This document shows, piece by piece, positions 8,837 to 49,830 of a DNA stretch of 64,000 nucleotides. Numbering within the stretch: the first letter of the stretch is position 1; each line of letters opens with the position of its first letter. The notes beneath the pieces were generated by a model that worked only from the letters and a program-made list of their open reading frames with translations, was not told the origin of the DNA and made no database searches. Position numbers and translations under genes: made by a program. Origin of the DNA: Octopus sinensis (lineage: Eukaryota); contig NC_042999.1 of the NCBI RefSeq assembly GCF_006345805.1, forward strand, positions 134,168,001 through 134,232,000, given 5' to 3'.

Positions 8837-9044
8837 TGTGTGTCTGTATGTGTGTATAATATATGTATATATAAATGTATGTATGTATGTATTATGAGAG
8901 AAAGAAAATGGAATTCACGAGACTCTTTATTATTCACTATGATCGTTTCGATCCATCATGCATCGGTGTCTCGTCGGTGAGATACTGTATAAACGGTATA
9001 CTACGAGGTGTATACCCAAATTTAAATATATACATACATATATA

Positions 9045-9110
<66 letters not shown>

Positions 9111-9440
9111 ATATATATATGCAGTAGTGACCACGATATAACGGTTCGTAATAACAAGTGTATTGAAATAGTTATTATTAAGATTAACAACACGTGGAAA
9201 CTAGATATTATACACATATTTAGATGTATCTAATATCGATCTTTCGTGAAAATTTCAAGTGAATGGAATACGTAAGTAATGAGAAAATAAACAAACAATC
9301 CTCCAAATTCCAGTTGCCAAAAGGTAAGGGTCACTTAGAAAAAATGAACAACTAACCGAGTATATGTTGTTTAGAAGTCTGTTAATGGGCTAACAGTTAC
9401 TTCTTATGATCTTATATTATTGGAACATTCAACTGTCAAC

Positions 9441-15809: not shown

Positions 15810-18800
15810 ATTTCTTGGTGCGCCCCATTCCCCATAAAAACCCAGGTCTTGACTCTGTCTCGTACATGAAAAGCTTGAAAACCACAAGTCTGTTAACTTC
15901 ACAGACCCACTAAGTCACCAGAGCTTGAATTTGCCGATGTTTCGGTTAAACTGTTGTTGTAAGTTAATATCTGCAGGAAAGATGTTTACAATGTTAGGGA
16001 GTAGACGAATGAGTCGTACAAAGCCAATCAGTTCCAAGGAACACAGACCATTGTAGTACGGTAGAATATGCATCATGAGGGGACAGCATGCTCGTGGAGT
16101 TGAGGCTGGAGAACAGCTGTGTATGATATTATGCTAATCAGCCTTATGTCTTTTTTTCTAACTATGGTCTTATGTTAATCAGTTGTGTGTGGTCATGGTC
16201 TGGATGTAATTTTATGATCAAAATAATAAGCCGAGTGGTCTTTTTTTGTGGAGTGCTATATATAAATATAAATATTATCAATTTAGCTAGGGATATACAT
16301 CATCCATAACGTCACCTACGAATCATATCGTTGTCATTTATATTCAGTTTCAGTTTCTATTGTGGGCAGCTACATGAACAACCATGAACAGGGAATTAAT
16401 TTTGATGATATGCAATGGTTGTCACACTTTACGGCTTTACCTGCATCTTTATTACTTTTGTCCATCAGGTTGATGTTTCCTGTTCTTGGATTGCAAACGC
16501 ATGCTCTTCAAAGTGGTAGGTAATAATCCGGCTATTCGACCATTTTAAACTGATTTGATGATCGATATTATAATCATCACAGAGATTTCTACTAACATAT
16601 CCATGCATAGTCTTCTGCTTATATAGGCTCACCCTTTCATCTGATGATATGTTGCGGTAGAGTCGTGCGACTTCTTTGGCATGTATTCTAGGTTATCAGA
16701 CAAGGAGTGTTGCTCAAGGAGCTGCCTTCCAACTCTTATGATGTTATCAGCTTCACGCATGCAAAGTTGGTCAAGGGATGCACTTCAACGCTTGGTGCTT
16801 AAAAGATGTTGCCGAAAGAATATGGTGCGGCATTCAAAGGCATTTTGGATAGATGTTAAGCCTTTGCCGCCTTGTTTTCGTTTTAGGTAGGGGCGGTCTA
16901 CAACACTGTTTATATGGAAATTATGTGTGCTTGTTAGTATTTTTCGGGTTTTCACATCAATGGCTCGCATGTCATTAAGCATCCAATCAAGCAGCCCAAA
17001 TGTTGGTATGAGTACTGGCACTGCAAACACATTGTGGGCCACTATTTTTTATTGAATGCAGAGAGTTCTGAGGTCCAGATTTTCTTTATTCGGCTGCAGT
17101 ATTATTTACTGACACGTGTTTTGTTACAGGCGCCACTGTAAGATATATTTTTATCCACCCCTAGATACCTGTAACATTCTTCGTCAGATACGGGAGAAAT
17201 AATCAAAATCATTAATAGAGATGTTACTAGTAGGTTTAAAAGTTTCCCCCTTTTCACAACCATATAACAACATTTATCCTGATCAAACTCAAATCCTACA
17301 TCCTTTGAGAATGTTGCAACTAAGTCAAGGCTCTTTTTCATCTCATGCATATTGTTTGCATAAAGTTTTAAGTTATCCACAAAGAAACAGTGTGTAATTT
17401 TGGTATTTCTGTTTTCTTGTAAACCAGAGAGATATCCTTCAGACTTCCTTAACATGAATGACAAAGGGTATACAGAAAGTATAAACAACGTCAAAGAGAG
17501 GCTGTCTCCTTGAAATATGCCTTTGCGATACTGTATTCTATTGGTGATAATACAATCACTCTTTGTGTTTAATTTCAAGATGGTGGCTCACAATGAAGTC
17601 AGATCAGCTATGGCTTTGAGTATTCTCACTGGAACTTTAGCTACTTGAAGGGCTTCTATCATCCATGAGTGAGGAATAGAGTCAAAGGCTTTCTCGTAAT
17701 CTAACCACATTAAATATAGGTTCCTCCTCTGCTCTCGCACCTCTGACATCATAGTTTTGTTGATTAGCAGTTGCTCGGCGCATCCCCAGACTCCCTCCTT
17801 TGTAGGTGCCTATTCTGCTGTGATAATGCTATTGGTTTCACAATGGTATTGGAGGAAGAGGTTTAAACATGCTGTATATATCTTATACATTAAGTTCTGG
17901 CAAGCAATTGACCGGTAGATTTTTGCCATGTCGGTGGTTCTGCATTTAGGGATCAAACTGGTCCCAGTGAAAACTTGCTGGCACAGATTGATAAGGTATG
18001 GTAGAATGTTAGCTTCTTATATCAATATCCAACAATCAATTCCATCCTGGAATTTCTGGATCACAGTTGCAAGAATTTCACCGTCAATGTTGAGTCTTGG
18101 ATGTAACGCAGGAGCAATAACTTTCTCGGATTTCTTCCAGCCACGGAGCATTTTGCTTAAATTCCTTCTCTTCACTCCAGATTTTCCTCCAGAAAAAGTC
18201 TCTTCTCGTGAAGGAGCTTCCGTGATATTTATTGCTCCTCCTCTCATGTCTCTGTATACTACTGTCTAGTTGCGTTTAAATTTTCTTGCTTATTGTTCTT
18301 CTCTTGGTTATTCTCTTCTGATGTCGGAGTTTTTCACTGACAGCTTTTAGCTCCTGCTAAAGTGAGTGCCCCCTTTTCACTGTCTCCAAACATCATTTCT
18401 AGCTCCTTCTTTACTTTCTGTTGGTGAGACGTTTAGTGATTTGCTTGTTTGCATGCAATAAGCACCATTACATGATTAATGATCTTCTGTAAACCAGTTA
18501 TCTTTTTTTTCTGTCTTCAAAACCCATGATGGTACTTTCTTTGTTATTTCGGTTTTGTTTACTTTTGAATATCATTCATGTACTGTTTTAGTAGTAGCCA
18601 GCTCATATAGACAGGCGTTAATCTGCTAGTATGTGGGCTCATCACACTGTTGTAAAAACTCATCCCCAATTTCGTTAACAGCTTTTAATACCGTATCTAG
18701 TGTTTTTTTTTACTTACTTTGGAAGTGAATTCTCTCTCCTCGAAAGAGTCCTTCAAAGCCAAAGTTATTTTCTCTCGGAAAATTTCATTAAGGGTACATT
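15810..18800 (-). mobile_element. Decayed Dong/R4-like RLE non-LTR retrotransposon (RT, CCHC and RLE remnants)
   Basis: WLDYEKAFDSIPHSW; KGIFQGDSLS..HCFFVDNLKLY; YRYLGVD; AVPVLIPTFG..RKILT..RPYLKRKQGGKGL; KQKTMHGYV..FAIQEQE; many stops. Ends are approximate. Confidence 0.85.
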
Positions 18801-19034: not shown

Positions 19035-19704
19035 TGTATGTATGTATGTATGTATGTATGTACGTACGTACGTATGTATGTATGTATGTATGTATGTATG
19101 TATGTATGTATGTATGTATGTGTATGCATGCATGTATGTATGTATGTATGTATGTGTACGTATGTGTGTGTGCATGCGTGTGTGCATGCGTGTGTGTGTG
19201 TGTGTGTGTGAGTGTGCGTTCGCGAGTTCACATACATGTATTGTGTGTGTTGATGTATACATACATTCATGCCTATCAATCAACTTAGACATTGCTTGTC
19301 CGTTTGTCTCATCTCTAGTTTTCATCAAATCTATCAGATTCATTCTTGTTGTACGTTGTCGTTCTCTCTTTTCCCTTTTCTTTTATTATTATTTTTTTTT
19401 TTTTTTTTTGCAGTCTCTTGAAAACCAATTTCTCAATTTTTGTTTCGTCCACATACACACGTACACCCCATGAACGTGTACAGCCCAATATGATTTAAAC
19501 AAGTTTAAGAACTTGTCAATTAAAACTATTCAGGCATTCCGTTTTCTTTCATCATCATCATCATCATCATTGACGTATGGCCTAGTAGTTAGGGTACTGT
19601 ACGCGCATATCTGTTCTTCGCTATTCTTAGTTCAGCTTCCTCGTTGGGATGTACTGCTCGTACACTGGGTTATGTGGATCTGTGCTTTTAGTTCCTTTGC
19701 TGCA

Positions 19705-20446
19705 ACAGAACCTGTTGGCTCTCCTCCTGCAACTCAACTTGATTTCGAGCCGGGTGGTCTGCTGCTGGAGAGGACCGATCAGGTAAAGGACCTGGGTATC
19801 TTGGTGGATTCCTCCTTTTCGCCTTCGGCCCAGTGCGTCCATGCTGCCAACAAAGCACGCGGAATTCTGTTCTTGATTCGACGGTCGTTCGGAATGCTCA
19901 CAGCAGCCATATTCCTACCAATCTATGTCACGCTGGTGAGACCCATATTGGAGTACGGGATTCAAGCCTTTTCTCCTTATCTCCTCAAAGACATACAGCA
20001 TCTCGAAAGAGTCCAGAAGCTGGCTACCCGCATGGTTCATGGTCTCAAAGATTTGTCCTATGAAGAAAGGCTGAGGACGCTCGACCTTTATTCTCTAGAA
20101 AAACGCCGCCGCCGTGGTGATCTCATTCTCGCCCACAACATCATAAGCGGAAAGTGTAACCTCTCGAAAGAGCTGTTCTTCAATCCTGCTCCAGAGCGTC
20201 GGCTGCGGGGTCATTCCGAAAAGGTCTACCTGCGACGATTTCATCTCAATCGAAGGAGAGGAGCTTTCTCCGTCCGGGTTGCGGATCCGTGGAATAAGCT
20301 GCCAGACGAGATGGTGAAGATGCCGACGACCACTTTGTTCAAAGCCTCCCTTGACCTCAAGTGGCCTGAACTCTTTACATGAACACCACCCTGTACTTAA
20401 CTCCATGTCCCCCTACATGGCCTTGCTATTTGCTTTTGAGCCAAAT

Positions 20447-32902: not shown

Positions 32903-33165
32903 TTGTTGTTTGTTCCTTCTCGAGCCACGTCTGGCTCATAGGGTCGATTTCCCGGTTTCCTTGGCGGTCCGTCGCAGGTGAGCTGCAAGATGCAGGAGGA
33001 AAGAGTGAGAGAAAGAGTCAACAGAAGTTCGGCGTTACTTCCTGCTGGAGCCGCGTGGAGCTTAGGCGTTTCGCTCATAAACACACACATCGCCCGGTCT
33101 GGGATTCGAACCCGCGATCCCTCGATCGCGAGTCCGCTGATCTAACCGCTAGGCCATGTGCCTCC
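32903..33165 (-). mobile_element. tRNA-derived SINE, family C head
   Basis: Minus strand ggaggcacatggcctagcggttagatcagcggactcg..gggttcgaatcccagaccggg; tail aaaccgggaaatcgaccctatgagcc..(ACA)n. Confidence 0.85.
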
Positions 33166-33235: not shown

Positions 33236-33865
33236 GTATATATATATATATATACACCACACACACACACACACACACACGAAATTCTCTCACAAGGCTC
33301 TCGTTGTACCGAGGTTAGAGATCCAAGGTGCCACGTAGTAGATAGAACTAAACATAGAGCCACGTGGTTGGGAAGCAAACTAATTCCCACACACCCGGCC
33401 TGTGCCTAAGTATATTTTTGATAAATCGTTTTGTCATAAGTAAATAGTGGGTCCACATCGATTTCACCGATAGGCGTTGAGTTTTTTTTTTTCTTACTTA
33501 ACTGAACTAACAACTCGTTGAATTAATGTAGAAACCTAATTTTCATGGGGTGTGACTCATAGTGTAATAAGACAGTTCCTTTAAATTACAAATACAGCCT
33601 ATCCGTTAGATTCTACACAGTTTCCATCTACATACTGCCATTTGTAATTCTTGTGTTAATCCAACAGTAATGATAAAAGACATATGCCACGCAATGTGAC
33701 CGAACATGGGATCTCATGATTATCGATCAAACTTCTCAACTATTAGACCAGGTTTCGTCTATATTGTCATATATATTTTCTTATTTATTTTACGTCTTGC
33801 GGTTATTGGACAACGGTAGTCATTCGGTGGTAGGGGTCAAATACAAAGATACTCACAAATGACAC

Positions 33866-33947
<82 letters not shown>

Positions 33948-34098
33948 CGTAAGGGTATTAGCCATTGGGGTGGGGTGGGGTGTTACTGATGCTTTTAGCC
34001 CCAGGCGATCAACGTCACCAGAAGGACTTTAGACACTATCTCAGTGCCCTTGTGTTATTTGCAAAGGGAGGTCATCCTTCCTCGAAGACCGAGTACTA

Positions 34099-34143
34099 CA
34101 TACGGACTATAGTTTCAAGGTAATTGCCTCTCGTCAACGCATG
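34099..34143 (-). ncRNA. Type I hammerhead ribozyme (U3 variant), GUC site
   Basis: Reverse complement is identical to 34334-34378. Confidence 0.75.
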
Positions 34144-34333
34144 GTAAGTACCGGTCTTCGATGAAGGAGTCCCCTTGCAAATAATATATAACGTTTTTCA
34201 CAGTAACCACTGTCACTGATGTAGAAAAACTGTCTGAAAACAATAATAAATCTCTGAACGAGATATAAACAGTAACAGTAAAACGTTATATATTATTTGC
34301 AAGGGGACTCCTTCATCGAAGACCGGTGCTTAC

Positions 34334-34378
34334 CATGCGTTGACGAGAGGCAATTACCTTGAAACTATAGTCCGTATG
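34334..34378 (+). ncRNA. Type I hammerhead ribozyme (U3 variant), predicted cleavage after C34372
   Basis: CAUGCG UUGACGA GAGG caauua CCUU GAA ACUAUAGU C CGUAUG: 6-bp stem I, 4-bp stem II with 6-nt loop, palindromic helix III, GUC triplet. Confidence 0.78.
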
Positions 34379-34593
34379 TAGTACTCGGGTCTTCGAGGGA
34401 GGATGACCTCCCTTTGCAAATAACACAAGGGCACTGAGATAGTGTCTAAAGTCCTTCTGGTGACGTTGATCGCCTGGGGCTAAAAGCATCAGTAACACCC
34501 CACCCCACCCCAGTGGCTAGCCACATTCAGATGGCTAATACCCCTTACGTTGTCGAGCGGTTACTGTTTATATCTCGTTCAGAGATTTATTAT

Positions 34594-34658
<65 letters not shown>

Positions 34659-35286
34659 AGAGAGAGACACACACTCACACACACACACACACACACACAC
34701 GAAATTCTCTCACAAGGCTCTCGTTGTACCGAGGTTAGAGATCCAAGGTGCCACGTAGTAGATAGAACTAAACATAGAGCCACGTGGTTGGGAAGCAAAC
34801 TAATTCCCACACACCCGGCCTGTGCCTAAGTATATTTTTGATAAATCGTTTTGTCATAAGTAAATAGTGGGTCCACATCGATTTCACCGATAGGCGTTGA
34901 GTTTTTTTTTTTCTTACTTAACTGAACTAACAACTCGTTGAATTAATGTAGAAACCTAATTTTCATGGGGTGTGACTCATAGTGTAATAAGACAGTTCCT
35001 TTAAATTACAAATACAGCCTATCCGTTAGATTCTACACAGTTTCCATCTACATACTGCCATTTGTAATTCTTGTGTTAATCCAACAGTAATGATAAAAGA
35101 CATATGCCACGCAATGTGACCGAACATGGGATCTCATGATTATCGATCAAACTTCTCAACTATTAGACCAGGTTTCGTCTATATTGTCATATATATTTTC
35201 TTTATTTATTTTACGTCTTGCGGTTATTGGACAACGGTAGTCATTCGGTGGTAGGGGTCAAATACAAAGATACTCACAAATGACAC

Positions 35287-35366
<80 letters not shown>

Positions 35367-35368
<2 letters not shown>

Positions 35369-36015
35369 CGTAAGGGTATTAGCCATTGGGGTGGGGTGGG
35401 GTGTTACTGATGCTTTTAGCCCCAGGCGATCAACGTCACCAGAAGGACTTTAGACACTATCTCAGTGCCCTTGTGTTATTTGCAAAGGGAGGTCATCCTT
35501 CCTCGAAGACCCGAGTACTACATACGGACTATAGTTTCAAGGTAATTGCCTCTCGTCAACGCATGGTAAGTACCGGTCTTCGATGAAGGAGTCCCCTTGC
35601 AAATAATATATAACGTTTTTCACAGTAACCACTGTCACTGATGTAGAAAAACTGTCTGAAAACAATAATAAATCTCTGAACGAGATATAAACAGTAACAG
35701 TAAAACGTTATATATTATTTGCAAGGGGACTCCTTCATCGAAGACCGGTGCTTACCATGCGTTGACGAGAGGCAATTACCTTGAAACTATAGTCCGTATG
35801 TAGTACTCGGGTCTTCGAGGGAGGATGACCTCCCTTTGCAAATAACACAAGGGCACTGAGATAGTGTCTAAAGTCCTTCTGGTGACGTTGATCGCCTGGG
35901 GCTAAAAGCATCAGTAACACCCCACCCCACCCCAGTGGCTAGCCACATTCAGATGGCTAATACCCCTTACGTTGTCGAGCGGTTACTGTTTATATCTCGT
36001 TCAGAGATTTATTAT

Positions 36016-36021
<6 letters not shown>
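35367..36021. mobile_element. Fold-back hammerhead-carrying mini-element, copy 2 (HHRs at 35521-35565 minus and 35756-35800 plus)
   Basis: Near-identical to 33946-34599. Confidence 0.8.
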
Positions 36022-36063
<42 letters not shown>

Positions 36064-36734
36064 TATATAGTGATAAAGAGAGAGACACACACTCACACAC
36101 ACACACACACACGGCGAGTTCCTTTCAGTTTCCATCTATCAAACGCATTCACAAGGCATTGATCTGCTCGGGGCTGTAGTAAAATATTCTTGCCCAGAGT
36201 GCTACGTAATAGGACTGAACCTAAAACTACATAGTTGAGGAGAATGCTTCTAACCACACAACCACGCCTATAGGTTTGTGACTGTGATGGATCTTCTTGA
36301 TATAAATACATATTTTGTAAAGAGCTTTGTCCATAAGGACTATTTGCATAAATCATATTGTGATAATTAAGATTGTCAAAAGCTCGAAACTTCACACGTC
36401 TAACTCCACTAAGCAAATAAATTTGCTGACAACGGCAAATTCTCAAAGATCCTGCTGTCAGAGACTACCATAATAGTAGTAGCAATAGCAACAGCAACAG
36501 CAAGAGCAGCAGTAGCAGCGCATGAGTTGGGTGAATTGGGAGCACGCCGGGCAAAATGCTTAACAGCATTTCGCTCTTCATTACGTTCTGTGTTCAAATT
36601 CTGCCGGAAGTTAACTTTGCCTTTCATTCGTTTCGGGGTCGATAAAATAAGAACTACTTGATCATCTGCATCGATGTAATCGACTTGCCCACTCCTTCGA
36701 AATTGCTAGCCTTGTGCCAAAATTTAAAATTATT

Positions 36735-39075: not shown

Positions 39076-39743
39076 CATGTATATATATATATACATATAT
39101 ATATATACATTTATATATATATATATACATATATATATATACATTTATATATGTATGCGTATGTGTATATATATGTATGTAATTATATGTATGCATGTAT
39201 GTGTACATGCATCCATGTATGTATGTGGGTATATATGTATATATGTATGTATGAATGTATGTATAGCAATAACTAGAGCCAAGATTCATAAATAAAAATT
39301 TCCCCAAATTACCGGGGCAAGTAACTAAATCAATAAATAAGGGAGTAGAAGGGTATAGAAATAGAGATATGAAACAAGTCGGCAGTGTTTTATTGATAAT
39401 AACTTCCGGTTAAGTCAGCAACAGCGTCCGCTATATTACAAGGGAAAAAAGAGACAAGAGTAATTTGATATCTCCCTTTGATATTGTGGTTTATTGCAGT
39501 TGACTGACATTGTCATCACTTGAATTGGAAACAAATGCGACAGGATGGTTGGCTGCCTACCCCGTTTGGAACATTAAAACTGACGCGTATTAAAGTGCAA
39601 GCATCTCGCATGACTGTGCGGGTATATAATAGATGCGTACATGCGTACGTACGTACATAAATGCATACGTACATACATTCATGCATACAAGCATAGATAC
39701 ATATATGCATACACATATGCATATCTATTTATCATATATATAT

Positions 39744-39809
<66 letters not shown>

Positions 39810-40559
39810 GAGCATATTGGCAGGCAGGTTGAGATGAGGGCAGTAACTATATTTGATCGAGGATCTACTTGATGAAGGGGTGCTAACATTTATACAGTGT
39901 GCATACACAGCTCCAGGCATATAAATCTTCACACACACACGCACACACACACACATACACACAGACACACACACAGACACACACACACACACACACCTTA
40001 AGAGACATGTCTACAAATGTATACATCGCATAGTCAGTACTGAAGGCGGTGATACAAAAATAATTTTCTGTAACTAAACACCTTTAAACTTCGTATACTG
40101 GTTGAATGCGTCACATAAAACATCTCTTACTCTTGGCGTTGTAGAGAAAATTCTGTGTTTTGGAAGTTATTTTTTGTTAAAGTTGTCGTATTTTGGTAAT
40201 TTCAACCAATCAATGACGTGTATTCAGCTGAATAAAACTACTGCAGTTGTTTGTCAACAACTTCCGGCGGTGTATATTTCATTTGTTACTGTTATTCAGT
40301 TGAATAAAATAACTGAAGAAAATAATGCGGGAGTGCTAAAATAGTAGTAGGGTGTTAAATGGTCAAGTGCCCCGAAAGTGACTTGTGGATGGTAGTAGTG
40401 ATTGAATTCTCGAGATATCTCTTTTGAATGTATTGTTTATTCTAAACAGCAGTAGGAAGGAAGTGGCAGAGAGGAAGAAGACGAAGAAGGAGACAGAATG
40501 ATAAGAGAATGCAGGATGGTAGGATAGTAGTAGGATGTTAAATTGTCAAGTGAGCTAAA

Positions 40560-42267
40560 AGAGATCCGTTGTGGAGTATAACAGTGATTGGAGCTGTTTT
40601 TAATGAATTCTTGGGTATCTCTTTTGAATGTGCCATTCTTAATATTTGCGTGTGTGTTTATTCTCAGGTCGTGGCGGATATATCATTTGTTGTGGATGCG
40701 TTCAAAAGGGGTTTGTATTTTGTAATAAAGAGGGGCTCTTTACTAATTCGTTGGCTACAGGTTGTATCATCTCTGAATTGATAGAGGGGAAAAATTCTGA
40801 AGCTTGGATTTTTGTTATTGGCGCAAATGTAGATGTGTTGGCTGAATGCTATTTTTCTGGGGGTTTTTTTGAATTTTGATCTGGGATCTGTGCAAAACCA
40901 TCCTTTACGTAGACTGTTTTTTGTTTGGCCTAAGTATTGTTCTTGACATCCAGAGTAGGTTAGTGTGTATATCAGGTTCTCCGAAGCACATGTGAAGCTG
41001 CTTTTCACTGTGAAACGTTGTCCCTGTTTGAAGGAGAACACTGATCCCTCACTTAAATCGACACATATCTCACAGTCTTCCACGTTTTTTTACTGACGGT
41101 TTTAGTGCTGTTGTTGAGCGTATTCGGGCTTGTGTTAGGAGACTTTCCATAGATTTGGGCTGTCTCTTGCTTTTTATCATGGTGTGTGGATTAAGTTCAT
41201 TCTGTGGGCCTTTCTTAGCAGGGGAATGTTTTGAAGGATGGTGTCGAAGACTTCGTTGTTAAGAGGGTTGTGTGTAGAGATATATGGTAGGGATTTTGGT
41301 TGTAAATCCTTCTTTAATTTAGGATGTCTGAGTCCGTGGATGTTGAGTTGTAGAGCACGTTGAAAGCCTATGTCAATTAGTGAAGGTGGGTAGTTCCTGG
41401 TGATGAGTGTATCATTTAGTTCATGTAGTCGTGTGTCCCTGGTGCTTGCATTAGAAACTATAGTACATATCCTTTTTGCTTGGTTGAAGGGAATATTCAT
41501 TCTGGTGTGTCTGGGATGGCATGAGTTGAACGGTAGATATTGCTTGGAGTTCGTGGGCTTATATCATATATCTGTCTCTATTACGTTGTTAGATTTCTTA
41601 AATAGGATGTCAAGGAAGGGAAGTTGTTGATGGCTATATTCCATCGGGAATTGAATGTTTACGTCAAGTCCATTTATAAGTACTTGAATTTTTTAAAGTT
41701 TCTCTATACTTTCATGCCAAAGAATGAAACTGTCATCCAGGTATCTCTTCCAGTGATTTTTCTATGTAGAGAGAGAATGGGCTGCCGTATTTTTCTAGAA
41801 CCATACGATAAAGACTAATTTCTAGATATCTCATGACTAGGTTGGCAAAAGAGGGGTCCATTCCCGTACCCATTGCAGTTCCCGATTTTTGTCGATAAAA
41901 GTTGTCTTTGAAGACGAAGTAGTTATTCTCCAAGATAAATTTTAACCCTTCTATCACGAATTCTCTTTTGATACGATGTGGGAGTTCGTTGTCGTAATTC
42001 TCTAACCAGAATTGAATTGCCTCTATGCCTAGGTTGTGGGGGATATTGGAATAGAGGTTGACTACATCGAAGGATACAAATAGGGTGGTTTTGTTTATTG
42101 TTTCAGGAAGGTGATTGAGCATATCCAGGTCGTCCCTTATGTAGCTTTTGACATGCTTGAGGAATGGTTTTAAGAGGGTATCTAAAAAGTTACTGAGGCG
42201 GTGGGTTTCGCATGCGGGACTTGCTATTATAGGTCTCAATTTGAGGTCATTAGGAGGAGAGACTTTC

Positions 42268-42353
<86 letters not shown>

Positions 42354-49729: not shown

Positions 49730-49830
49730 NNNNNNNNNNNNNNNNNNNNNNNNNNNNNNNNNNNNNNNNNNNNNNNNNNNNNNNNNNNNNNNNNNNNNNN
49801 NNNNNNNNNNNNNNNNNNNNNNNNNNNNNA
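49730..49830. other. Assembly gap (N run)
   Basis: About 100 N. Confidence 0.99.

What the first reader, a model, noticed from the sequence alone, without database searches (positions are those of the whole stretch)
33946..36021. Fold-back mini-element with a complete hammerhead ribozyme on each strand (retrozyme-like), present twice
Seen: each 252-272-bp arm is non-coding and folds into a long rod (UUAUUUGCAAGGGGA/UCCCUUUGCAAAUAA, UCCUUCAUCGAAGACC/GGUCUUCGAGGGAGGA, GU(A/G)CU/AGUAC). The rod is capped by a type I hammerhead: CAUGCG-UUGACGA-GAGG caauua CCUU-GAA-ACUAUAGU-C-CGUAUG. The arms are inverted, so both strands encode a divergent HHR (four copies in 2 kb), and the element sits in (TA)n. 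Established: type I HHRs with short palindromic helix III occur in Penelope pseudo-LTRs and metazoan non-LTR retrozymes and can cleave as dimers. The Schistosoma Sm-alpha HHR has a 4-bp stem II with loop CAAAUA, and this loop is CAAUUA. A stem I bulge 6 bp from the core fits the loop I-loop II tertiary contact. Inference: a possibly undescribed cephalopod retrozyme-like RNA, mobilised in trans by a Penelope RT/EN, with a natural C3U core variant.
Basis: partly seen in the sequence, partly recalled or inferred. Interest (0 to 1): 0.88.

Follow-up and report, generated by a model that had tools for sequence, protein, structure and literature searches.

The report
Octopus hammerhead retrozyme copies, head-to-head
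The fold-back is two inverted, incomplete copies of a ~360-nt non-coding octopus retroelement that carries a genuine hammerhead self-cleaving RNA motif; this is a known kind of animal "retrozyme"/Penelope-type repeat, here seen in a cephalopod and locally duplicated.

Summary
Window 33947-34599 is a fold-back in (TA)n. A 45-nt type I hammerhead (HHR) lies on each strand, at 34334-34378 (+) and 34099-34143 (-). The same structure recurs at 35368-36021.

The HHR is real. Homologous copies in Octopus bimaculoides and O. sinensis loci keep the same architecture. In 8 distinct sequences, 94.5% of cells are paired and 10 of 14 pairs show compensatory changes.

"Present twice" is one 1.42-kb tandem duplication bounded by (CA)n. 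It includes unique flanks and shows no substitutions, so it is not two insertions.

The fold-back is not the mobile unit, because other copies are single. In O. sinensis the family forms a 2.7-unit direct tandem array with a 362-bp period, the hallmark of animal non-LTR retrozymes. Inverted pairs, (TA)n targets and odd tail pieces are the published signature of Penelope-like (PLE) integration.

The window copy has U3 opposite G8. Relatives carry C3-G8, and the tandem array carries the U3-A8 covariant.

A transcript spanning both arms would bury the HHR in a ~240-bp duplex. This locus is therefore probably a dead insertion.

Verdict: a new cephalopod member of a known kind, of moderate interest.

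The parts
33849..33946 (.). Left (TA)n microsatellite flank (target)
   Evidence: Sequence read. (TA)n tracts cover only 2.3% of the window.
33947..34197 (-). Body of the minus-strand copy (left arm, 251 nt). It ends at ...CCTTACGT next to (TA)n and lacks 18 nt that the right arm has.
   Evidence: (nhmmer E = 1e-60).
34099..34143 (-). Hammerhead ribozyme motif of the minus-strand copy. C17 is at 34105.
   Evidence: (58.9 bits with model R1).
34198..34236 (-). 39-nt segment X with no counterpart in the plus copy. Read on the minus strand, it lies between a tail and the unit body.
   Evidence: It has no significant similarity to the L011 junction.
34237..34276 (-). 40-nt copy of the family's 3' tail. 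It is in sense orientation on the minus strand and is the reverse complement of 34560-34599.
   Evidence: 100% over 40 nt. Tail homologues in L001, L002 and L012 are shown.
34277..34279 (.). 3-nt junction (agt) between the two head-to-head copies
34280..34599 (+). Plus-strand copy (320 nt): rod hairpin with the HHR at its tip, 3' region, 11-nt linker and 40-nt tail. It ends at (TA)n.
   Evidence: nhmmer E = 3e-91. GC is 46%.
34295..34424 (+). Self-complementary rod (extended helix I) capped by the HHR
   Evidence: z = -7.0; helices I and II are in the minimum-energy structure.
34334..34378 (+). Hammerhead ribozyme motif CAUGCG UUGACGA GAGG caauua CCUU GAA ACUAUAGU C CGUAUG. Predicted cleavage is 3' of C 34372.
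   Evidence: (RF00163 positions 1-45 of 45, 17.1 bits).
34600..34660 (.). Right (TA)n flank, followed by GA and CA repeats
35368..36021 (.). Second image of the whole fold-back, created by the tandem duplication. Minus copy 35368-35619, X 35620-35658, tail copy 35659-35698, plus copy 35702-36021. HHRs at 35521-35565 (-) and 35756-35800 (+).
33258..36112 (.). Two 1.42-kb tandem duplicates (33258-34694 and 34678-36112). Each starts and ends in (CA)n. They differ only by 6 indel columns in homopolymer or repeat runs.
40664..42269 (-). Context: a 5'-truncated Penelope-like element (RT 41733-42269, GIY-YIG-like piece 40664-41083). It is a possible type of trans-acting partner. It has no nucleotide similarity to the arms.

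Best explanation
**What it is.** The 654-bp fold-back is two head-to-head, incomplete copies of one ~360-nt non-coding retroelement unit of Octopus. The unit is a long hairpin (rod) tipped by a canonical metazoan type I hammerhead, followed by a ~220-nt 3' region that ends in a conserved tail. The hammerhead has a 6-bp helix I, a 4-bp helix II with a 6-nt loop, and a short palindromic helix III.

**The family.** It is multi-copy in O. bimaculoides and O. sinensis. In O. sinensis it also occurs as a direct tandem array with a 362-bp period. It therefore behaves as an animal non-LTR retrozyme, that is, a non-autonomous, Penelope-dependent HHR repeat.

**Inferred life cycle.**
1. Tandem arrays are transcribed.
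2. Neighbouring HHRs pair through the palindromic helix III and cut after C17.
3. The ~360-nt monomers are ligated into circles by a tRNA ligase.
4. Multimeric or circular RNA is copied by a Penelope-like RT/GIY-YIG enzyme, primed at nicks in (TA)n.
5. Priming on both target strands, together with template jumps, gives inverted and permuted copies.

**This locus.**
- The plus copy is A-linker-tail.
- The minus copy reads tail-X-A. This is almost one full turn of a 359-nt unit.
- The window HHR has U3 opposite G8, so it is probably a weak or dead ribozyme.
- Any transcript through both arms would lock the HHR into a ~240-bp duplex.
- The locus is therefore most likely an inert insertion that was later duplicated, flanks included, between (CA)n tracts.

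**Shown versus inferred.**
- Shown: the anatomy, the homology, the covariation, the tandem array in a relative and the (TA)n association.
- Inferred: cleavage, circularisation, the enzyme that moved it, and the reading of the minus copy as permuted.
For: **The HHR is real.**
- RF00163 aligns end to end over 34334-34378.
- Homologous copies were found by similarity of the downstream region, not of the HHR. They carry an HHR of the same architecture at the same place: L001 14377-14421 and L002 19983-20027.
- On 3 sequences, 97.6% of cells are paired and 8 of 14 pairs are compensatory. Slid controls give 18-46%.
- Model R1 then found L011 (three times), L012 and L006 independently, with E from 6e-6 to 7.5e-3.
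- On 8 distinct sequences, 94.5% of cells are paired and 10 of 14 pairs are compensatory.

**Retrozyme hallmarks.**
- L011 19266-20223 is a tandem array with period 362, 2.7 copies and 95% matches.
- HHR-to-HHR spacing there is 362 and 358 nt. The unit inferred in the window is 359 nt.
- GC is 46%.
- There is no ORF and no protein homologue.
- The fold is rod-like.
- These match the published definition of animal non-LTR retrozymes.

**PLE-type integration.**
- Inverted 5'-truncated copies, partial tandems, 30-40-bp tails and (TA)n targets are described for PLEs.
- Dual HHRs 100-700 bp apart on opposite strands are described in Schistosoma.
- Further inverted arrangements were seen here: L002 68-112/480-524, L006 722-1178 and L012.
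- Nine of 11 element ends abut (TA)n, although only 1.8% of window positions lie at a tract edge.
- A PLE fragment lies 6 kb away.

**Duplication.**

**Sequestration.** In a fold of the whole element, the HHR is fully paired with the other arm.
Against: - There are no RNA, cleavage or circle data.
- Only five independent family loci could be sampled, from about 290 kb of Octopus DNA. Copy number and the share of tandem versus solo copies are therefore unknown.
- The tandem array (L011) is the most divergent relative and comes from another species.
- Segment X shows no significant similarity to the array's junction. The 'permuted unit' reading thus rests on length (359 against 358-362 nt) and on orientation only. 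The central tail could instead be an L012-type inverted mini-copy.
- No autonomous PLE with a matching 3' end was found. The PLE in the window has no HHR core and no similarity to the arms.
- None of these HHRs reaches Rfam's gathering score.
- The core carries U3.
Confidence: 0.7

Rival explanations
1. The arms are the 3' ends (pseudo-LTR part) of an autonomous Penelope-like element, extremely 5'-truncated and inserted as the usual inverted pair. There is no separate non-autonomous family.
For: PLE insertions are heavily 5'-truncated, often carry an inverted truncated copy and a 30-40-bp tail, target (TA)n and bear HHRs near the 3' end. PLE fragments are common in the window and in the sampled loci.
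Against: The O. sinensis array repeats a complete 362-bp unit 2.7 times with no ORF between units. The window copies together close a 359-nt unit. The HHR is of the canonical type that the literature assigns to retrozymes, not the minimal type of PLE pseudo-LTRs. The arms have no similarity to the PLE in the window.
Confidence: 0.15
2. The fold-back is a functional mini-element in its own right. Both strands would be transcribed and each would release RNA through an active natural U3 hammerhead.
For: Both strands carry an intact-looking HHR at the tip of a stable rod. The arms are 98% alike. U3 also occurs in the tandem array, paired there with A8.
Against: Other family copies are not fold-backs. 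A same-strand partner HHR, which would be needed to release a unit, lies 1422 nt away and exists only because of the duplication. A transcript across both arms sequesters the HHR completely. U3 faces G8 here, not A8. The arms differ by an 18-nt deletion and end at different sites.
Confidence: 0.08
3. The element is a fold-back or miniature inverted-repeat DNA transposon that inserts at TA, and the hammerhead-like motif is incidental.
For: It has long inverted repeats and 40-nt terminal inverted repeats around 34237-34599, with TA-rich flanks. The L006 element has 75-nt terminal inverted repeats in (TA)n.
Against: The inverted repeats are not conserved features of the family. L002a and the L011 array lack them. 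The HHR shows strong compensatory evolution, so it is under selection and is not incidental. The direct tandem array with the HHR in phase fits an RNA-mediated repeat.
Confidence: 0.04
4. The hammerhead is a chance match inside an ordinary palindromic repeat.
For: The Rfam score is only 17.1 bits against a gathering score of 34, and the core is non-canonical. A genome of gigabase size would hold hundreds of chance matches at the descriptor's rate of 0.01 per 64 kb.
Against: Homologous copies keep all three helices through compensatory changes and keep 11 of 13 core positions invariant.
Confidence: 0.01

Closest known systems
Animal non-LTR retrozymes (Cervera & de la Pena 2020, PMC7229834; Li et al. 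2026 preprint 10.64898/2026.07.22.740005)
   Same: Canonical type I HHR; a unit of a few hundred nt (here ~360); GC below 50%; no ORF, LTR, PBS or PPT; a highly self-paired RNA; direct tandem arrays in the family (L011, 362 bp x 2.7); presumed dependence on PLEs.
   Different: This locus is an inverted pair and not a tandem. Its HHR has U3 opposite G8. No circular RNA or cleavage data exist for any cephalopod member. The family is not named in the literature I could search.
Penelope-like element insertion structures and their HHRs (Cervera & de la Pena 2014, PMC4209133; Craig et al. 2021, PMC8557442)
   Same: Head-to-head inverted copies with 3' ends pointing outward; partial tandem or tail pieces; a microsatellite (TA)n target; HHRs on opposite strands 100-700 bp apart (here 190 bp).
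   Different: No RT/GIY-YIG ORF is attached. The HHR is the canonical form, with loop-bearing helices I and II, and not the minimal PLE form. No sequence match to the PLE in the window.
Schistosoma Sm-alpha SINE-like HHR repeat (the basis of the Rfam RF00163 consensus)
   Same: Identical segment lengths (6-7-4-6-4-3-8-1-6). The helix II loop is CAAUUA against CAAAUA. Helix III is palindromic. The carrier is a non-autonomous repeat.
   Different: A different phylum and an unrelated flanking sequence. Helix II here is weak (G-U and A-U pairs). The core has U3. The Rfam score is half the gathering threshold.
Amphibian satellite-2 / axolotl retrozyme HHRs
   Same: A short helix III that is expected to need a dimeric HHR for efficient cleavage.
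   Different: Those are proven to cleave as dimers and to form circles, and they occur in huge tandem arrays. Nothing of that is shown here.

Membership tests
Hammerhead ribozyme, type I (Rfam RF00163) | 5' core CUGANGA | tested here: inconclusive
   The window copy has UUGACGA (U3 opposite G8). Homologues have CUGAGGA (L002a), CUGACGA (L006), CCGACGA (L001) and UUGAAAA, which is the U3-A8 covariant (L011). Natural U3 is documented only together with A8.
Hammerhead ribozyme, type I (Rfam RF00163) | 3' core GAA, the A15.1-U16.1 pair, and a cleavage-site nucleotide that is not G | tested here: met
   GAA, then A...U closing helix III, then C17 (GUC). These are invariant or conservative in all copies.
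Hammerhead ribozyme, type I (Rfam RF00163) | Three helices in type I topology, supported by covariation | tested here: met
   In 8 distinct sequences, 94.5% of cells are paired and 10 of 14 pairs have changes on both sides. Slid controls give 27-48%.
Hammerhead ribozyme, type I (Rfam RF00163) | Score at or above Rfam's gathering threshold | tested here: not met
   17.1 bits against 34. There are no gathering-level hits in the window or in six Octopus loci.
Hammerhead ribozyme, type I (Rfam RF00163) | Self-cleavage | not testable with these tools
   This needs in vitro transcription.
Animal non-LTR retrozyme | Short direct tandem repeats (150-450 bp), each with a type I HHR | tested here: inconclusive
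   Not met at this locus. The arrangement is inverted, and the only direct repeat is the 1.42-kb duplication. Met for the family in O. sinensis: period 362, 2.7 units.
Animal non-LTR retrozyme | Non-coding, GC below 50%, no LTR/PBS/PPT | tested here: met
   No ORF longer than 61 aa and no homologue. GC is 46%.
Animal non-LTR retrozyme | Highly self-paired monomer RNA | tested here: met
   z = -7.0 for the rod and z = -11.65 for 34237-34599.
Animal non-LTR retrozyme | Expressed as linear and circular monomer RNAs | not testable with these tools
   No transcriptome access.
Penelope-like element (autonomous) or its pseudo-LTR | RT plus GIY-YIG ORF contiguous with the repeat | tested here: not met
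   No ORF lies in or next to the element. The nearest PLE fragment is 6 kb away and unrelated in sequence.
Penelope-like element (autonomous) or its pseudo-LTR | Complex inverted or tandem insertion with a tail, in a microsatellite | tested here: met
   compared with the descriptions.
Fold-back / MITE DNA transposon | Terminal inverted repeats conserved among copies, with a target-site duplication | tested here: not met
   L002a and the L011 array have no terminal inverted repeats. A duplication cannot be read inside (TA)n.

The most novel reading that the evidence does not exclude
The minus-strand copy (tail-X-body, 330 of 359 nt, missing only the 11-nt linker) may be a circularly permuted unit. 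Two independent classes of 3' end were also seen: at the tail in the window plus copy, L001, L002a and the L012 mini-copy, and about 50 nt upstream in the window minus copy, L012 and L011. Both classes abut (TA)n. Together these would be footprints of reverse transcription that started at different A/U-rich sites on a circular or multimeric hammerhead RNA. That would be genomic evidence for circle-templated, Penelope-mediated retrotransposition in cephalopods. In addition, the window's U3-G8 core would be a living intermediate between the C3-G8 and U3-A8 cores found within one family.
Probability: 0.25. Interest if true: 0.55.

Novelty: new member of a known kind. Interest (0 to 1): 0.35.

Why it matters
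The finding adds a cephalopod family to the animal hammerhead retrozymes, with structure-level proof from compensatory changes.

It also shows that Rfam's gathering threshold misses all the members sampled here. Octopus genomes may therefore hold many more hammerheads than annotation suggests. In about 290 kb of sampled DNA I saw five family loci, plus a distinct L002 pair and a related L006 element.

One family holds C3-G8, U3-G8 and U3-A8 cores. It offers a compact natural series for testing how the core pair evolves.

The permuted and inverted copies are useful material for working out how Penelope-type enzymes integrate circular or multimeric RNA.

Long perfect inverted repeats of this kind are also candidate double-stranded RNA sources in an animal known for heavy RNA editing. 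That link is speculative.

For this particular locus, the practical message is that it is an ordinary, probably inert, repeat insertion.

Tried and rejected
- **Rfam at gathering level.** No hits on the window or on six Octopus loci. At E <= 10 on 801 nt, only miRNA-type hairpin hits caused by the inverted repeat appeared. I reject these as artefacts of the palindrome.
- **Protein search with the longest spurious ORF of the arm**, run to harvest copies from ORF-called assemblies. No hit.
- **Protein search with the GIY-YIG piece of the window's PLE**, run to reach full-length Octopus PLEs and their 3' ends. No hit. The autonomous partner therefore stays unidentified.
- **Exact and degenerate DNA pattern scans.** Metagenome contigs gave 0 hits and one chance match in a coding-looking contig. 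Genome contigs and viral contigs gave nothing.
- **HHR core in the 3' region of the window's PLE.** None found.
- **Similarity of segment X to L002 upstream sequence and to the L011 junction.** Not above shuffles. I withdrew an earlier idea that GTTTTTCTAC marked homology.
- **tRNA-derived SINE origin.** No tRNA in 32-38 kb.
- **MAFFT alignment of HHRs of unequal length.** It misplaced gaps, so I used a covariance-model alignment instead.
- **Argonauta locus and the ENA assembly ERZ25072999.** No family copy. The ENA contigs share no repeats with the window.
- **Dimer cofolding.** It gained only -5 kcal/mol and did not form the textbook helix III duplex. This is uninformative.
Full report
**1. 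The observation**

Window 33947-34599 is a fold-back. The arms 33959-34197 and 34280-34519 are 98% complementary, with 82 nt between them. Alignment extends the repeat to 33947 and 34548. The left arm lacks 18 nt that the right arm carries between two TGGCTA repeats. A second inverted pair, 34237-34276 against 34560-34599, is 40 nt long and perfect.

Each arm is itself a hairpin. For 34290-34430 the fold energy is -60.1 kcal/mol with z = -7.0. Hammerhead helices I and II are present in that minimum-energy structure.

The motif CAUGCG-UUGACGA-GAGG-caauua-CCUU-GAA-ACUAUAGU-C-CGUAUG lies at 34334-34378 (+) and 34099-34143 (-). It recurs at 35756-35800 (+) and 35521-35565 (-). No other place in the 64 kb fits the descriptor. 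Shuffled sequence gives 0.01 such matches per window.

Rfam's Hammerhead_1 model aligns to the motif over all 45 positions without a gap. The score is only 17.1 bits against a gathering score of 34, so default Rfam scans report nothing. (TA)n tracts flank the element on both sides.

**2. 'Present twice'**

The second copy is part of a tandem duplication, 33258-34694 ~ 34678-36112. The duplicated block carries about 770 bp of non-element flank. (CA)n tracts sit at the start, the middle and the end.

The two images differ by six indel columns, all in homopolymer or repeat runs. There are no substitutions. This is either a very recent unequal exchange or an assembly artefact. It is not a second transposition. 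The four hammerheads are therefore one sequence.

**3. The host**

A 5'-truncated Penelope-like element lies on the minus strand. It has an RT piece at 41733-42269 and a GIY-YIG-like piece at 40664-41083. The RT piece is 84% identical to an Octopus bimaculoides protein, and most other top hits are O. bimaculoides or O. sinensis. The window is octopus DNA.

**4. Relatives**

I fetched 20-kb stretches of Octopus chromosomes around PLE-like genes. This gave five independent family loci, counting the window.

| Locus | Species | Position | Notes |
|---|---|---|---|
| window | Octopus | 33947-34599 | the fold-back |
| L001 | O. bimaculoides | 14425-14172 (-) | cut by an assembly gap; ends in tail plus (TA)n |
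| L002 | O. bimaculoides | 19927-20235 (+) | single copy |
| L011 | O. sinensis | 19266-20223 | direct tandem array; period 362, 2.7 units, 95% matches; (TA)n on both sides |
| L012 | O. sinensis | 8951-9182 | (TA)n, then a 30-nt reverse-complement tail, then a sense copy cut inside the HHR core, then (TA)n |

L001 and L002 were first recognised through the region downstream of the ribozyme. Even so, each has a hammerhead of identical segment lengths in register with the window's.

Two other HHR elements turned up near these copies:
- An inverted HHR pair of another family at L002 68-112/480-524.
- A 457-bp hairpin-ended element with an internal HHR, sitting in (TA)n, at L006 722-1178.

**5. 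Is the hammerhead real?**

Yes.
- On the three sequences aligned by homology, 97.6% of cells pair and 8 of 14 pairs change on both sides. Slid controls give 18-46%.
- A covariance model built from those three sequences then found the three L011 units, L012 and L006 as new hits in 290 kb, with E from 6e-6 to 7.5e-3.
- On the resulting 8 distinct sequences, 94.5% of cells pair and 10 of 14 pairs are compensatory. No shuffle reached the observed values for pairing, compensatory changes or covariation score.
- Core positions G5, A6, A9, G12 (except in one MAFFT mis-gapped alignment), A13, A14, A15.1 and U16.1 are constant.

The variable core positions are informative:

| Copy | Core | Note |
|---|---|---|
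| window | UUGACGA | U3 opposite G8 |
| L002a | CUGAGGA | canonical |
| L006 | CUGACGA | canonical |
| L001 | CCGACGA | U4 changed to C |
| L011 array | UUGAAAA | U3 with A8 |

The U3-A8 form is the same covariant reported in Schistosoma PLEs. That C3 pairs with G8 in the active fold is established knowledge (Martick and Scott 2006, from memory). The window's U3-G8 keeps a wobble pair but is probably less active. This last point is inference.

**6. What the family is**

The published definition of animal non-LTR retrozymes has five parts: a canonical type I HHR, direct tandem repeats of 150-450 bp, GC below 50%, no coding or LTR features, and a highly self-paired RNA that circulates as linear and circular monomers.

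The family meets the sequence-level criteria:
- Its architecture is that of the 'canonical metazoan HHR', with helix I of 6 bp, helix II of 4 bp and a short palindromic helix III.
- It forms a 362-bp tandem array.
- Its GC is 46%.
- It has no ORF and no protein homologue.
- It folds into a rod.

RNA evidence cannot be obtained here.

**7. Why a fold-back?**

The fold-back is not a family feature, because L002a and L011 lack it. The PLE literature describes exactly this insertion pattern:
- heavy 5' truncation;
- an inverted truncated copy next to the 5' end;
- partial tandems;
- a 30-40-bp tail at one end;
- (TA)n targets;
- in Schistosoma, dual HHRs 100-700 bp apart on opposite strands.

In my sample, 9 of 11 element ends abut (TA)n. 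Only 1.8% of window positions lie at the edge of such a tract.

In the window the plus copy reads body(269)-linker(11)-tail(40). The minus copy reads tail(40)-X(39)-body(251). The pieces sum to a 359-nt unit, against 358-362 nt between hammerheads in the array. The minus copy can therefore be read as nearly one turn of a circular or multimeric template that starts and ends at different points from the plus copy.

The minus copy, L012 and the L011 array all end at the same homologous site, about 50 nt upstream of the tail end. This suggests two preferred priming sites.

That reading is inference. Segment X has no detectable similarity to the array's junction. The central tail could instead be an L012-style inverted mini-copy.

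**8. Function of this locus**

A same-strand partner HHR exists only 1422 nt away, and only because of the duplication. A transcript across both arms pairs the whole HHR with its complement. The core is also non-canonical. I therefore regard the locus as an inert insertion. At most it is a source of long double-stranded RNA.

**9. Comparison and novelty**

The closest known systems are:
- animal non-LTR retrozymes;
- PLE insertion structures;
- the Schistosoma Sm-alpha repeat, whose consensus the Rfam model reproduces almost position for position.

Type I hammerheads in cephalopods were already counted: 235 Rfam hits in the giant squid genome. I found no description of this family, or of retrozymes in cephalopods, in the searchable literature. 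A 2026 preprint argues that animal retrozymes derive from PLE pseudo-LTRs in vertebrates. The finding is a new member of a known kind.

**10. Limits**

I sampled only about 290 kb of Octopus DNA, and the sample is biased towards PLE fragments. No autonomous partner was identified. No expression or cleavage data are available. The status of the duplication is open.

Noticed in passing
window 40664-42269 (-): A 5'-truncated Penelope-like element. It has an RT piece at 41733-42269, a middle ORF at 41177-41500 and a GIY-YIG-like piece at 40664-41083, broken by frameshifts. Its 5' break abuts a (TA)n/(CA)n tract at 42270. There is no hammerhead core in the 1.1 kb 39601-40700 that covers its 3' end.
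   Followed up: partly
window 33258-36112: The two 1.42-kb duplicates differ only by length changes in homopolymer or repeat runs, with no substitutions, and are bounded by three (CA)n tracts. This could be a very recent duplication or an assembly artefact.
   Followed up: partly
window 34328/34149 and 34399/34079: The substitutions between the two arms are all G in the plus copy and A in the minus copy, read in sense orientation. There are two such sites, and a third lies next to the 18-nt indel. This is compatible with an A-to-I edited template but far too few sites to test.
   Followed up: no
L002 1-561 (O. bimaculoides CM046618.1): Another inverted pair of hammerheads from a different family (AUGAAC CUGAAGA UUGC auaaau GCAA GAA AGUAUACU A GUUCAA). 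The arms are about 85-115 nt with a ~360-nt unique spacer, and the 3' ends point outward.
   Followed up: partly
L006 722-1178 (O. sinensis CM016861.1): A 457-bp element in (TA)n with 75-nt terminal inverted repeats, an internal perfect hairpin and a canonical-core hammerhead at 890-948 whose helix II is enlarged. The fold has z = -17.
   Followed up: partly
L006 11480-11600: A fragment in which a reverse-complement tail-like sequence is joined directly to the CAGTAACACCCC...GCCATATTGAGATGGC block of the family. It may be an internally deleted or snapped-back relative.
   Followed up: no
L009 9377-13417 (ENA ERZ25072999, organism unknown, shares no repeats with the window): Tandem repeats of PLE gene pieces (DUF8422, a 161-aa piece, HTH_animal) with a period of about 1.94 kb. 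This illustrates partial tandem PLE insertions.
   Followed up: no
window 17102-17578 (-), 19513-20382 (+): Fragments of non-LTR (LINE) reverse transcriptases. One matches Pfam RVT_1 at E = 5.5e-11.
   Followed up: no
window 33100-33160 and 33282-33400 / 34702-34820: A reverse-complement tRNA-like SINE head (GGTTCGAATCCCA motif) and SINE-like sequence next to the (CA)n tracts that bound the duplication. ARAGORN calls no tRNA there.
   Followed up: partly
window 49730-49829: A 100-N assembly gap.
   Followed up: no
L001 14426-14700: An assembly gap starts exactly at the 5' side of the family copy's hammerhead. This fits the published remark that tandem or inverted PLE-type structures break assemblies.
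   Followed up: no
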